Below, piece after piece: positions 30,459 to 38,712 of a stretch of DNA of 64,000 nt. Position 1 is the first letter of the stretch, and every line of letters starts with the position of its first letter. The notes beneath the pieces were generated by a model, which was not told where the DNA came from, did not search any database, and saw only the letters and a program-made list of their open reading frames with translations. The position numbers were made by a program, and so were the translations under genes. Location of the stretch: positions 51,584,001-51,648,000 of the forward strand of contig NC_043010.1 of assembly GCF_006345805.1 (NCBI RefSeq), read 5' to 3'. Origin of the DNA: Octopus sinensis (Eukaryota).

Positions 30459-30531
30459 ATGGCCAAATTGTTTGGATTGGTTGTCACAGGATTCATATTT
30501 GTTTTACTGCTGAATGGATCCATGGCAAGTG
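30459..30531 (+). CDS. Gene B (secreted ferritin-like) coding exon 1: signal peptide [24 protein letters not shown] + G (phase 1)
   Basis: ATG at 30459; 73 nt = 24 codons + 1; hydrophobic core; donor AGTG|gtaaga. Confidence 0.85.
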
Positions 30532-34378: not shown

Positions 34379-35850
34379 TGTGTGTGTGTGATATCTATCT
34401 ATCTATCTATATAGATATATTCATTATCATCATGATCATCATTTAATGTTCATTGTCTATGCTGGCATGAGTTGGATGGTTTGACCAGGGCTGTTAAGCT
34501 GAGGGGCTGCACCAGACTCCAGGCTGAGATGGCATGGTTTCTATGGCGATATGCCCTTCCTAATGCCAATCACTCTGAGAGTGTAATGGGTGCTTTTACA
34601 TTCCACTGGCACAGGTGCCAGTTGTGTGACATCAGTATCTGCTATGACTATGATTTTACTTGGCTTGATGGGTCTTCTATTCAAGCACAGCATATTGTCA
34701 AAGATCTTGGTCATTTGTCATAGCTTCTGTGGGACCCAACACTCAAAAGACACTTTTCACGTGCCACTGGCATGGATGCTAGTTATGTGACACCAGCATT
34801 GGCCTTATATATATATATCATCTTCATTTAATGTCCGCTTCCCATGCTAGCATGGGTTGGACGATTTGACTGAGGATTGGTGAGCCAGATGGTTGCACCA
34901 GGCTCCAATCTGATCTGGCAGTTTCTACAGCTGGATGCCCTTCCTAACGCCAACCACTCTGAGAGTGTAGTGGGTGCTTTTATGTGCCACCAGCACGAGG
35001 GCCAGTCAGGTGGTACTGGCAACGGTCACACTCAAATGGTGTTTTTTATGCGCCACCTGCACAGGAGCCAGTCCAGCGGCACTGGCAACGGCCTTGCTTG
35101 AATGTTTTTTTCATATGCCAACGGCACAAGTGCCAGTAAGGTGACGCTGGTAACAATCACACTTGAATGGTGCTTTTTACGTGCCACCAGCATGGAAGCC
35201 AGTTTAGCTGCTCTGGCAACGATCACGCTCGGATGGTGCTCTTAGCGCTCCACTAGCACAGATGCCAGTCATCGAATTTGATGTCAATTTCAATGTCACT
35301 TGCCTCAACAGGTCTTCGCAAGCAGAGTTTGGTGTCCAAAGGTACGCATAAGTGGGCTGGTTACACCCCTGGCATAGGCCATGAGGTTATGGTCTCACTT
35401 GGCTTGCCGGGTCTTCTCAAGCACAGCATATTTCCAAAGGTCTTGGAAGTTAATAACAACTTGCATACAGATATGTCTATGTTTTGTCAGGTTATGAAAT
35501 GTTTATTTCTTTATCATTTGCAGTAATATGCAGGATGTTTCATATATATATGTTTTATATATATATAAATGTATGTATGAATATATATATGTATATATAT
35601 TGTTGAAGTTTTAGGTTCAGTTTTATGGAGAGCCTTTGACTTTTCTATTGGAAAAGGTTTTCTTAATCTAATCCTTACATGCTTTTGTTTATAGCTTTAT
35701 AAGTACTTCATGAACCAATTTCAAAAGAGAACCATAAGTGTTTATATATATATATATATATATATAATAATATATATAGATATATAACTATATAATATAT
35801 ATATATATATTATATTATTTTATTAATCATATGTTATTCTTTTTATTTAG

Positions 35851-35924
35851 ATGGCAAAGTGGCCAACAAGTTGAAGCTCCTCTTCCAGGCATATTACCAA
35901 AAATTTTGAACTCCTGCGGCTGCT
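35851..35924 (+). CDS. Gene B exon 2: (D)GKVANKLKLLFQAYYQKF*TPAAA, with in-frame TGA at 35907-35909
   Basis: Acceptor ttctttttatttag, donor TGCT|gtgagt; 74 nt; phase 1 to 0 is required by both flanking exons and mirrors gene A exon 2. Confidence 0.75.
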
Positions 35925-36023
35925 GTGAGTATATATGTATATACAGTAATATATATATATACAGTATATATATATATATATATATATATATCTAATATGT
36001 ATATATATGTATATATGTATGTG

Positions 36024-36075
<52 letters not shown>

Positions 36076-36278
36076 TATATAATAAATATATAATATATAT
36101 CCTTTTATTTGTTTCAGTCATTTGACAGATATATACAGTAATATATATATATATATATCAAAAAGCAATAAAGATTCAAGTTAATTTAAATGAATTTACT
36201 TGAATATGGTACCTAACTTAGATGCACCAAAAAAAACTATACTGTTTTAACAATACAGTAATGTGGGGTGATTATAAG

Positions 36279-36907
36279 CGAGAAAGAAGCAACAAGAATG
36301 GATAGGTTTTTAGTACAATCGTTTCATACAAGGACAGGCTTTATTAAAAGTTGCAAAAATTACAGCATATAAACGTGTCCCGTACTCATCAGCTAAAATA
36401 CATGTGAGTTCTCTAGACATCCTAGTGGTTGAGGCTATACTCATGAAGTAATGTAGATAATTAAGTAACATAAACAGATTTCCAAAGTTCATTAAAGTTC
36501 TTTAAAGATGATGTACAGTCTTATCACAGAATTTTAAAAAAGTTTCAATAGCATCACAGAGAAGGTATGTAATCCCTCATCATATCTCTGGAAATTCATA
36601 TGTGCAATATGGATTAGGTCACCTTCTCTGTGATGCTATTGAAACTTTTTTAAATTCTGTGATAAGACTGTACATCATCTTTAAGAAACTTTAATGAACT
36701 TTGGAAATCTGTTTATGTTACTTAATTATCTACATTACTTCATGAGTATAGCCTCAACCACTAGGATGTCTAGAGAACTCACATGTATTTTAGCTGATGA
36801 GTACGGGACACGTTTATATGCTGTAATTTTTGCAACTTTTAATAAAGCCTGTCCTTGTATGAAACGATTGTACTAAAAACCTATCCATTCTTGTTGCTTC
36901 TTTCTCG
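36279..36907. repeat. Near-perfect inverted repeat (arms ~288 bp, loop ~54 bp)
   Basis: ORF track shows identical peptides at 36310-36492(-) and 36694-36876(+); arms end at 36566 and start at 36621. Confidence 0.95.
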
Positions 36908-36919
36908 TATATATATAAT

Positions 36920-38571: not shown

Positions 38572-38712
38572 GGAAATAGTTTCAATCAGCATTCATGGAA
38601 AGGATTCAGTGCAAAATTCCATGAGTATTCCAGTCAGAGTTATGACTTAGGTTTATATACCTTGGACCTTTCGAATAAACATGGGTTTGTGTTCGATTTC
38701 CAAGAAGTGGCG
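38572..38712 (+). CDS. Gene B exon 3: GNSFNQHSWKGFSAKFHEYSSQSYDLGLYTLDLSNKHGFVFDFQEVA
   Basis: Acceptor tttctatttccag, donor GGCG|gtaagt; 141 nt, phase 0-0, open. HSWKGFS resembles gene A YAWPGLS; LSNKHGFVFDFQEV resembles ferritin LQNQRGGRIFLQDI. Confidence 0.85.

What the first reader, a model, noticed from the sequence alone, without database searches (positions are those of the whole stretch)
35907..35909. Obligatory in-frame TGA at codon 44 of gene B
Seen: exon 1 ends in phase 1 and exon 3 starts in phase 0, forcing exon 2 into the frame ...YYQKF-TGA-TPAAA. The other open frame is incompatible with both neighbours, and skipping the exon frameshifts. Counting back from the conserved intron, the TGA sits at an aromatic position (F in gene A ASFCYLQM, Y in ferritin ASYVYLSM), so Trp (TGG) is the likely intended residue. 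All other exons are intact. Options: base-call error, a recent nonsense allele (simplest), A-to-I recoding UGA to UGG (coleoids recode extensively, but a 5' G neighbour is disfavoured by ADAR), or selenocysteine (one-residue shift aligns it to the Cys of gene A; no SECIS can be assessed because the 3' UTR is outside the window).
Basis: partly seen in the sequence, partly recalled or inferred. Interest (0 to 1): 0.7.

Follow-up and report, generated by a model that had tools for sequence, protein, structure and literature searches.

The report
Frameshift pair, not a recoded stop
The in-frame TGA is real in this octopus genome assembly, but it comes from one extra base and one missing base 20 nt apart in a small exon, most likely assembly errors, and is not a recoded or edited stop codon.

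Summary
The window is Octopus sinensis assembly GCA_006345805.1, chromosome CM016872.1. Gene B is LOC115219182, an uncharacterised secreted protein with weak ferritin-like similarity.

TGA at 35907-35909 is codon 44 of the only frame that joins exon 1 to exon 3.

The sister species O. vulgaris has the same 74-nt exon intact: ...YYQNF-ELLRLL|GNSF. Against it, the window has one extra A in an A-run (A5 vs A4, 35899-35903) and lacks one T at the last exon base (CT|GTGAGT vs CTT|GTGAGT).

The 18 nt between the two changes are identical in both species and read ELLRLL in the +1 frame. Argonauta hians has EFLRLV there. So TGA is only the first out-of-frame codon. The homologous residue is Glu, not Trp, Tyr or Cys.

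Selenocysteine is excluded: there is no SECIS match in the 3' flank. UGA-to-UGG editing is excluded: the orthologue has the same A, and there is no dsRNA. Programmed +1 frameshifting is excluded: exon 3 is in frame 0.

The other six main exons (568 nt) are 100% identical to O. vulgaris. I favour a consensus error (about 0.58) over a real, recent disabling allele (about 0.35). Reads would decide. Interest is low.

The parts
30459..30531 (+). Gene B (LOC115219182) exon 1: ATG, 24-codon signal peptide, plus 1 nt (phase 1), donor GTAAGA.
   Evidence: Identical (73/73 nt) in O. vulgaris. Matches residues 1-24 of CAI9733176.1.
30514..30531 (+). Out-of-frame ATG (MDPWQV) inside exon 1, used as the start codon by RefSeq model XP_036364934.1. 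That model skips exon 2 and so lacks the signal peptide.
   Evidence: tblastn of P0001 against the window. Gene range in L001 starts at 2001, which is window 30514.
35851..35924 (+). Exon 2, 74 nt, the exon that carries the lesion.
   Evidence: Homologous 74-nt exons: O. vulgaris L003 7575-7648 and Argonauta hians L002 4274-4347.
35899..35903 (+). A5 run. O. vulgaris has A4 here, so this is a +1 insertion that shifts the frame and turns CAA AAT TTT GAA into CAA AAA TTT TGA A.
   Evidence: Pairwise alignment of the window with L003.
35907..35909 (+). The TGA of the finding: the first codon of the out-of-frame stretch. Its G and A are the first two bases of the ancestral GAA (Glu).
35908..35925 (+). 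18 nt that read ELLRLL in the +1 frame. 17 of them are identical to O. vulgaris, and the 18th base is the donor G. In frame 0 (35907-35924) they read *TPAAA.
   Evidence: tblastn of the O. vulgaris protein hits 35899-35925 as KNFELLRLL. Argonauta has EFLRLV.
35924..35925 (+). Site of the missing T: the window has GCT|GTGAGT, O. vulgaris has CTT|GTGAGT. This -1 deletion restores the downstream frame and keeps the exon at 74 nt.
35925..35930 (+). Donor GTGAGT of exon 2.
   Evidence: The same hexamer is present in O. vulgaris.
38572..38712 (+). Exon 3: GNSFNQHSWKGFSAKF...FDFQEVA, phase 0 to 0. This is the best-conserved part of the family and the ferritin helix-B-like region.
   Evidence: 141/141 nt identical to O. 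vulgaris. 60% identical to the Argonauta protein.
42625..42660 (+). Exon LSNYIQQVLKTD.
44065..62617 (+). Seven annotated cassette micro-exons: six of 21 nt and one of 15 nt. Coordinates: 44065-85, 45665-85, 48532-52, 50123-43, 55826-46, 58694-714, 62603-17. They share conserved splice-site flanks. They are present in XP_036364934.1 and CAI9733177.1 and absent from isoform CAI9733176.1.
63676..63720 (+). Exon IKAIKTAMLKFYKCK, the last gene B exon inside the window. Two more exons and the stop codon lie 1.8-4.6 kb beyond the window end.
5850..18217 (-). Gene A, a divergently oriented distant paralogue with an intact ORF of 203 aa. Exons: 18217-18139, 14870-14785, 11874-11725, 7061-6972, 6056-5850. 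The model was built by hand.
   Evidence: Ferritins are the top PDB matches. Aligns with the gene B family along its whole length.

Best explanation
Shown: the TGA is not a mutated or recoded sense codon. It is the first codon of an 18-nt stretch of exon 2 that is read out of frame. Compared with the intact orthologue, this assembly has one extra A in an A-run (35899-35903) and lacks one T at the last base of the exon (35924/35925). The two 1-nt changes cancel, so the exon is still 74 nt and the downstream frame is kept. ELLRLL becomes stop-TPAAA.

Inferred: the two indels are most likely consensus errors of the long-read O. sinensis assembly. They sit in a ~110-nt unique island between long TA microsatellites, where short-read polishing is weak. 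On this reading the living animal has an intact gene for a signal-peptide-bearing, ferritin-like secreted protein. The RefSeq model (start at an out-of-frame ATG, exon 2 skipped, no signal peptide) is then a workaround for the error.
For: The window is identical to GCA_006345805.1 CM016872.1 (0 mismatches over 35,487 nt).

O. vulgaris proteins CAI9733176.1 and CAI9733177.1 read [55 protein letters not shown]....

O. vulgaris exon 2 DNA is 74 nt and ends CTT|GTGAGT with an A4 run. The window has A5 and CT|GTGAGT.

tblastn of the O. vulgaris protein finds KNFELLRLL in the +1 frame at 35899-35925.

Argonauta hians exon 2 is also 74 nt, enters in phase 1, ends ...GAA TTC CTT CGA TTA GTG|GTAAGT (EFLRLV) and exits in phase 0. 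The intact frame is therefore ancestral.

For error rather than a real lesion:
- Both changes are length changes of a base run (A4 to A5, TT to T).
- The six other main exons (568 nt) are 100% identical to O. vulgaris, while the locus differs by 1.53%. P(0 substitutions) is 1.7e-4 for both lineages and 0.013 for the sinensis lineage alone if it were neutral. This argues for continuing constraint.
- Two disabling changes lie 20 nt apart and there are none elsewhere.
- The exon is flanked by TA microsatellites at 35742-35815 and 35930-36110.
- The assembly was made from PacBio long reads. This comes from the title of Li et al. 2020 as cited in PMC10700109, plus my own knowledge.
Against: No reads could be examined, so error versus real lesion is not settled.

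Exon 2 also differs from O. vulgaris by two base substitutions (N/H and A/T). These are not typical long-read consensus errors. With them, the exon has 4 differences in 74 nt, at or above the intronic background: only 4% of 74-nt windows in the locus have at least 4 differences including at least 2 indels.

The RefSeq model skips exon 2. This could reflect RNA-seq evidence of real skipping.

One-nucleotide indels between the two assemblies are fairly common in this locus (1.7 per kb).

The O. vulgaris assembly also comes from noisy (ONT) reads (PMC10700109). However, an error is very unlikely to create an ORF that matches Argonauta.
Confidence: 0.58

Rival explanations
1. The two indels are real in O. 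sinensis, fixed or segregating. LOC115219182 then carries a recent disabling lesion. Transcripts that include exon 2 end at codon 44 and would be targets of nonsense-mediated decay. Transcripts that skip exon 2 lose the signal-peptide frame. This is a young unitary pseudogene or a null allele.
For: Exon 2 carries 2 substitutions and 2 indels against O. vulgaris while the other exons carry none, as if this exon alone were unconstrained. The RefSeq Gnomon model skips the exon. Opposite-sign 1-nt indel pairs about 20 nt apart also occur in non-coding sequence of the locus, for example 60453/60473, so such pairs exist between the two genomes.
Against: Two independent neutral indels within 20 nt in at most 2.5 My are improbable: about 0.06-0.13 one-nt indels are expected per 74 nt for both lineages together. 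The second indel gives no selective benefit, because the shifted stretch begins with a stop. There are 568 nt of other exons without a single change.
Confidence: 0.35
2. A point nonsense mutation or a base-call substitution error of a sense codon (TGG Trp, or TGC/TGT Cys) at 35907-35909.
Against: The close orthologue has T-GAA at these bases, with the same G and A. The five following codons also match the orthologue only in the +1 frame (6/6 residues ELLRLL against 0/6 for XTPAAA).
Confidence: 0.01
3. A-to-I editing recodes UGA to UGG (Trp) in the mRNA.
For: Coleoids edit extensively, and stop-loss editing is known there. In the paper I read, only UAG to UGG is named (PMC8382921). The harm-permitting model allows G-to-A mutations at edited sites (PMC6881472).
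Against: The intact orthologue has the same genomic A, so there is no ancestral G to restore. Editing would still leave TPAAA in place of LLRLL. The 5' neighbour is G. The exon with its flanks folds no better than shuffled sequence (z = 0.46) and the site is unpaired in the predicted structure.
Confidence: 0.005
4. UGA encodes selenocysteine.
For: None beyond the presence of an in-frame UGA.
Against: Orthologues have no Cys or Sec there, and the frame differs. No SECIS match at E <= 10 in the 2 kb downstream of the true stop codon (L001 39900-42123). None among the 150 best matches shown for window 30000-64000.
Confidence: 0.003
5. Programmed +1 ribosomal frameshifting at UUU-UGA, of the RF2 or antizyme type, restores ELLRLL.
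For: UUU UGA is a slippery codon followed by a stop. tRNA-Phe can re-pair in the +1 frame, and the +1 frame encodes the conserved peptide.
Against: Because the T at the exon end is missing, a ribosome in the +1 frame enters exon 3 out of frame and stops after about 25 codons (read directly from the sequence). The orthologues need no frameshift.
Confidence: 0.002

Closest known systems
Homopolymer or short-run indel errors in long-read genome assemblies that break ORFs and mislead gene annotation
   Same: Both changes alter a run length by 1 nt (A4 to A5, TT to T). They lie in a short unique island between microsatellites. The orthologous ORF is intact. The annotation pipeline produced a workaround model with an alternative ATG and a skipped exon.
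   Different: Two errors 20 nt apart that cancel exactly is unusual. Two base substitutions lie in the same exon. No read evidence was available here.
Young unitary pseudogene or segregating null allele caused by a frameshift
   Same: A premature stop follows a 1-nt insertion in an otherwise conserved, lineage-restricted gene, and the sister species has the gene intact.
   Different: A second, compensating indel has no selective explanation. All the other exons show no change at all.
Stop-loss A-to-I recoding in coleoid cephalopods (UAG to UGG; PMC8382921)
   Same: An in-frame stop inside a conserved cephalopod ORF.
   Different: The codon is UGA with a 5' G. There is no dsRNA. The orthologue has the same A, and the flanking codons are out of frame as well.
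Ferritin family (PF00210), including secreted insect and mollusc ferritins
   Same: Signal peptide followed by a helical protein. A family profile matches ferritins in two collinear stretches (helices A-B and C-D), best E = 4.8e-4 against PDB sequences. There is a phase-0 intron near the end of helix A, as in ferritin genes.
   Different: No Pfam match. The ferroxidase residues (E-E-x-x-H of helix B) are not conserved. The gene B family has about 70-100 extra residues in the middle. Structure models were uninformative (pLDDT 35-36).

Membership tests
Selenoprotein gene | The in-frame UGA aligns with Sec or Cys in orthologues. | tested here: not met
   O. vulgaris and Argonauta orthologues read F-E-(L/F)-L-R-L there, in a frame shifted by one base. 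There is no Cys or Sec.
Selenoprotein gene | A SECIS element in the 3' UTR. | tested here: not met
   Rfam scan of the 2 kb after the true stop codon (L001 39900-42123) found no SECIS match at E <= 10. The window scans also showed none. The mapped extent of the 3' UTR is unknown.
ADAR stop-loss recoding site | Genomic A where relatives have G (restorative), or a conserved edited A inside a dsRNA structure. | tested here: not met
   The orthologue has the same A. The 141-nt fold gives z = 0.46 and the site is unpaired. The 5' neighbour is G.
ADAR stop-loss recoding site | A/G mismatch between DNA and RNA reads. | not testable with these tools
   No read data are accessible.
Programmed +1 frameshift site (RF2 or antizyme type) | A slippery codon followed by an in-frame stop. 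| tested here: met
   UUU UGA at 35904-35909.
Programmed +1 frameshift site (RF2 or antizyme type) | The rest of the protein is encoded in the +1 frame. | tested here: not met
   Only 18 nt are in +1. Exon 3 and all later exons are in frame 0, and a +1 reading of exon 3 ends at a TAG.
Long-dead pseudogene | Several independent disablements and a neutral substitution rate across the exons. | tested here: not met
   Lesions are confined to exon 2. There are 0 differences in 568 nt of the other exons against 1.53% in the locus.
Ferritin-like superfamily | Significant sequence match to ferritin profiles. | tested here: inconclusive
   Pfam gave no hit. PDB phmmer gave ferritins on top at E = 0.0085 for gene A and 0.083 for gene B. 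A three-sequence family profile gave E = 4.8e-4 with two collinear stretches, but PI3K p85 coiled-coil chains score similarly.
Ferritin-like superfamily | Ferroxidase-centre residues (Glu, Glu-x-x-His). | tested here: not met
   The aligned positions are Q/S/L in gene B and K/A in gene A (alignments, read by eye).
Ferritin-like superfamily | Four-helix-bundle fold. | tested here: inconclusive
   AlphaFold2 models were all-helical, but with mean pLDDT of 34.9 and 36.3. No fold search was justified.

The most novel reading that the evidence does not exclude
The double indel is real in O. sinensis. A secreted ferritin-like gene, conserved since the Octopus-Argonauta split and intact in O. vulgaris, was then disabled within the last ~2.5 My. 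Alternatively, it was converted, by exon-2 skipping and a downstream out-of-frame ATG, into a form without a signal peptide, as the RefSeq model predicts.
Probability: 0.35. Interest if true: 0.2.

Novelty: not a real feature. Interest (0 to 1): 0.12.

Why it matters
For recoding biology it does not matter: there is no selenocysteine, editing or readthrough case here.

It has practical value in three ways:
1. The RefSeq protein XP_036364934.1 of LOC115219182 is probably a mis-model: wrong start codon, no signal peptide, exon 2 missing.
2. A lone in-frame stop in a long-read assembly can hide a compensated frameshift. That only shows up against a close orthologue, not against distant relatives.
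3. It defines a small octopod-restricted family of secreted, weakly ferritin-like proteins: LOC115219182 and a head-to-head paralogue 12 kb away.

Tried and rejected
- tblastn of human and mollusc ferritins against the window found no canonical ferritin. A five-sequence ferritin HMM was too weak.
- The fragment ELHASYHYLSF at 9340-9308 (-) lies in a pyrimidine-rich tract preceded by a stop codon. I judged it chance.
- I proposed an 'exon 4' at 61122-61234 with good splice sites and a weak match to ferritin helix C. Neither species' annotated models use it, so I withdrew it.
- The similarity of 61251-61364 (ISDLCRIIQSH) to LCDFIETH was judged chance.
- The word-index protein searches returned nothing for either gene, although XP_036364934.1 contains exon 3 exactly and was in the collection. 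Those negatives were therefore not evidence of absence.
- MAFFT could not align genes A and B on their own.
Exon 3 alone then gave the decisive hits.
CAI9733176.1 had no gene on record, but CAI9733177.1 did.
- AlphaFold2 on gene A and on the O. vulgaris protein gave pLDDT of about 35.
- A literature search for LOC115219182 found nothing.

Full report
**1. What is in the sequence.**
The window is AT-rich eukaryotic DNA full of TA and CA microsatellites and transposon copies. TGA is at 35907-35909.

- Exon 1 is 30459-30531. It has an ATG, 24 codons of a typical signal peptide ([24 protein letters not shown]) and one extra base, followed by donor GTAAGA.
- Exon 2 is 35851-35924. It is 74 nt, with acceptor ...ttctttttatttag and donor GTGAGT.
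- Exon 3 is 38572-38712. It has 47 codons, phase 0 to 0, and donor GTAAGT.

In the only frame that joins these exons, exon 2 reads D-GKVANKLKLLFQAYYQKF-TGA-TPAAA, and TGA is codon 44. The second open frame of exon 2 cannot be joined to either neighbour. Skipping the exon shifts the frame. No other plausible exon 2 exists in the 8 kb between exons 1 and 3.

**2. Gene A and the ferritin link.**
Gene A lies head-to-head with gene B, 12 kb away on the minus strand. Its exons are 18217-18139, 14870-14785, 11874-11725, 7061-6972 and 6056-5850. It has the same architecture, a signal-peptide exon ending in phase 1, and an intact 203-aa ORF.

- Pfam finds nothing in either protein.
- phmmer against PDB sequences puts ferritins on top for both: gene A at E = 0.0085, with 59 of the 60 best hits being ferritins, and gene B exon 3 at E = 0.083.
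- A profile of three family members reaches E = 4.8e-4 against ferritins, with two collinear stretches covering helices A-B and C-D.

The ferroxidase residues are absent, and the AlphaFold2 models were uninformative (pLDDT 35-36).

**3. Identification of the locus.**
The word-index searches found nothing. A full HMMER search with exon 3 alone then found four proteins. Two are relatives:
- P0001, with 100% identity.
- P0004, with 60% identity.

The other two matches are large repetitive proteins unrelated to this family.

A follow-up profile search and a cluster look-up named them:
- P0001 is XP_036364934.1, 'uncharacterized protein LOC115219182 [Octopus sinensis]'.
- P0005 and P0006 are CAI9733176.1 and CAI9733177.1, hypothetical proteins of Octopus vulgaris.
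- P0004 is GAB1604366.1 of Argonauta hians.
- P0007 is a C-terminal fragment from O. bimaculoides.

The O. sinensis locus (L001, GCA_006345805.1, CM016872.1) is identical to the window over all 35,487 shared bases. The window is therefore CM016872.1 51,584,001-51,648,000.

**4. The decisive comparison.**
Both O. vulgaris isoforms begin [61 protein letters not shown].... Exon 2 is therefore used and intact in the sister species, which diverged about 2.5 Mya (PMC10700109).

The exon 2 DNA compares as follows:
- O. vulgaris (L003 7575-7648) is 74 nt: ...TAT TAC CAA AAT TTT GAA CTC CTG CGG CTG CTT|GTGAGT.
- The window reads ...TAT TAC CAA AAA TTT TGA ACT CCT GCG GCT GCT|GTGAGT.

The differences are:
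- two substitutions (AAC/CAC and GCA/ACA);
- one extra A in the A-run (A5 against A4, 35899-35903);
- one missing T at the last exon position (CT| against CTT|).

The 17 bases between the two indels are identical in the two species. Read in the +1 frame, the window gives KNFELLRLL at 35899-35925. tblastn finds this directly with the O. vulgaris protein.

Argonauta hians has a 74-nt exon 2 that enters in phase 1 and ends ...TTT GAA TTC CTT CGA TTA GTG|GTAAGT, which reads F-EFLRLV. The intact reading is therefore ancestral, and the state in the O. sinensis assembly is derived.

The TGA is simply T+GA(A): the last T of the run plus the first two bases of the Glu codon.

**5.
- *Point nonsense or base-call substitution of TGG.* Refuted. 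The orthologue has the same G and A, and the next five codons are also out of frame.
- *A-to-I editing.* There is nothing to restore, because the orthologue also has A. The 5' neighbour is G. The exon with its flanks folds no better than shuffled sequence (z = 0.46) and the site is unpaired. In the coleoid paper I read, the only stop-loss editing named is UAG to UGG (PMC8382921). The harm-permitting model (PMC6881472) requires an ancestral G.
- *Selenocysteine.* There is no Cys or Sec in orthologues. No SECIS match was found in the 2 kb after the true stop codon, which lies outside the window but is available in L001, nor in the window.
- *Programmed +1 frameshifting.* I also considered this, because UUU-UGA is a classical slippery-stop motif and the +1 frame encodes the conserved peptide. 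It fails because the missing T puts exon 3 back into frame 0. A ribosome that shifted would stop about 25 codons into exon 3.

**6. Error or real lesion?**
This cannot be settled without reads.

For a consensus error:
- Both indels are run-length changes.
- The exon sits in a ~110-nt unique island between TA microsatellites at 35742-35815 and 35930-36110.
- The assembly comes from PacBio long reads (Li et al. 2020, as cited in PMC10700109, plus my own knowledge).
- The six other main exons of the gene (73, 141, 36, 45, 105 and 168 nt, 568 nt in total) are 100% identical to O. vulgaris, although the locus differs by 1.53%. P(0) is 1.7e-4 overall, and 0.013 for a neutrally evolving sinensis lineage alone.
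- Two independent, exactly cancelling indels 20 nt apart in a gene with no other damage are hard to explain by real neutral decay. About 0.06-0.13 one-nt indels are expected per 74 nt.

For a real lesion:
- Exon 2 also has two substitutions. Its total of 4 differences in 74 nt resembles unconstrained sequence: 4% of background windows are as different.
- RefSeq's Gnomon model skips the exon.
- Similar opposite-sign indel pairs occur in non-coding DNA of the locus (60453/60473).

I put the assembly artefact at about 0.58 and a real fixed or segregating null allele at about 0.35.

**7. Annotation consequence.**
XP_036364934.1 starts at ATG 30514, which is out of frame inside exon 1 (MDPWQV). It uses the exon 1 donor and jumps straight to exon 3. 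It therefore lacks the signal peptide and exon 2. This looks like a pipeline workaround for the broken exon.

The O. vulgaris models were built from Iso-Seq and RNA-seq, protein alignments and ab initio evidence (PMC10700109). They are the better description of the gene.

**8. Verdict.**
The mechanistic interpretations that made it interesting (Trp codon, editing, selenocysteine) are not supported. The feature is a compensated frameshift, most probably an artefact. Interest is low.

Noticed in passing
window 44047-62630, + strand (micro-exon cores at 44065-85, 45665-85, 48532-52, 50123-43, 51950-70, 55826-46, 58694-714, 62603-17): There is a dispersed array of repeat units found only inside gene B's long intron, all in the gene's orientation. 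Each unit has near-identical flanks, TTCAAATTGTCTTTGCAG | core | GTRAGTATAAA, around a variable core of 21 nt (15 nt in one unit). Seven cores are annotated as in-frame micro-exons, six of 7 residues and one of 5 (NNKRPKN, ICKNSIP, KPDPTAD, KCMKPPI, ICTKTMD, LRGAEKH, MCHTY). They appear in both the O. sinensis RefSeq model and one O. vulgaris isoform, and are skipped in the other isoform. Conserved splice flanks around hypervariable cores are unusual. The pattern has no match elsewhere in the window.
   Followed up: partly
window 30514-30531 and 35851-35924: RefSeq protein XP_036364934.1 (LOC115219182) uses an out-of-frame ATG inside exon 1 and skips exon 2, so it has no signal peptide. This is probably a mis-model caused by the exon 2 lesion.
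   Followed up: yes
window 5850-18217, minus strand: Gene A is an intact five-exon gene for a 203-aa secreted protein. It is a distant paralogue of gene B (about 24% identity to the Argonauta member in the MAFFT alignment) and lies head-to-head with it. Ferritins are its best PDB matches. My hand-built model could not be checked against public annotation.
   Followed up: partly
window 3786-3898, minus strand: There is a full-length match to the 5S rRNA model (50.8 bits, E = 1.2e-7, above the gathering score). It lies next to SINE-like repeats and may be a 5S gene, a pseudogene or a 5S-derived SINE head.
   Followed up: no
window 36273-36540 and 36646-36913: Intron 2 of gene B holds a large foldback: 268-nt inverted arms, 98% complementary, 105 nt apart. 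This is a strong potential dsRNA or a MITE-like element about 350 nt downstream of exon 2.
   Followed up: no
window 48.9-49.6 kb and 50.8-51.4 kb; also 50099-50314 and 51926-52141: There is a recent local duplication of about 1.8 kb within gene B's intron. It includes one micro-exon unit: KCMKPPI at 50123-43 is used, while its copy KCMNPPI at 51950-70 is not annotated.
   Followed up: no
window 53167-54850, + strand: This stretch holds a retrotransposon pol fragment, with a protease-like region and a reverse transcriptase carrying the YIDDLLI motif. A LINE-type reverse-transcriptase fragment lies at 59157-60189. Both are inside gene B's intron.
   Followed up: no
tool behaviour: The word-index protein search reported no candidate for a query that contained 47 residues identical to a protein in the collection. 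Negative results from that tool should not be read as absence.
   Followed up: yes
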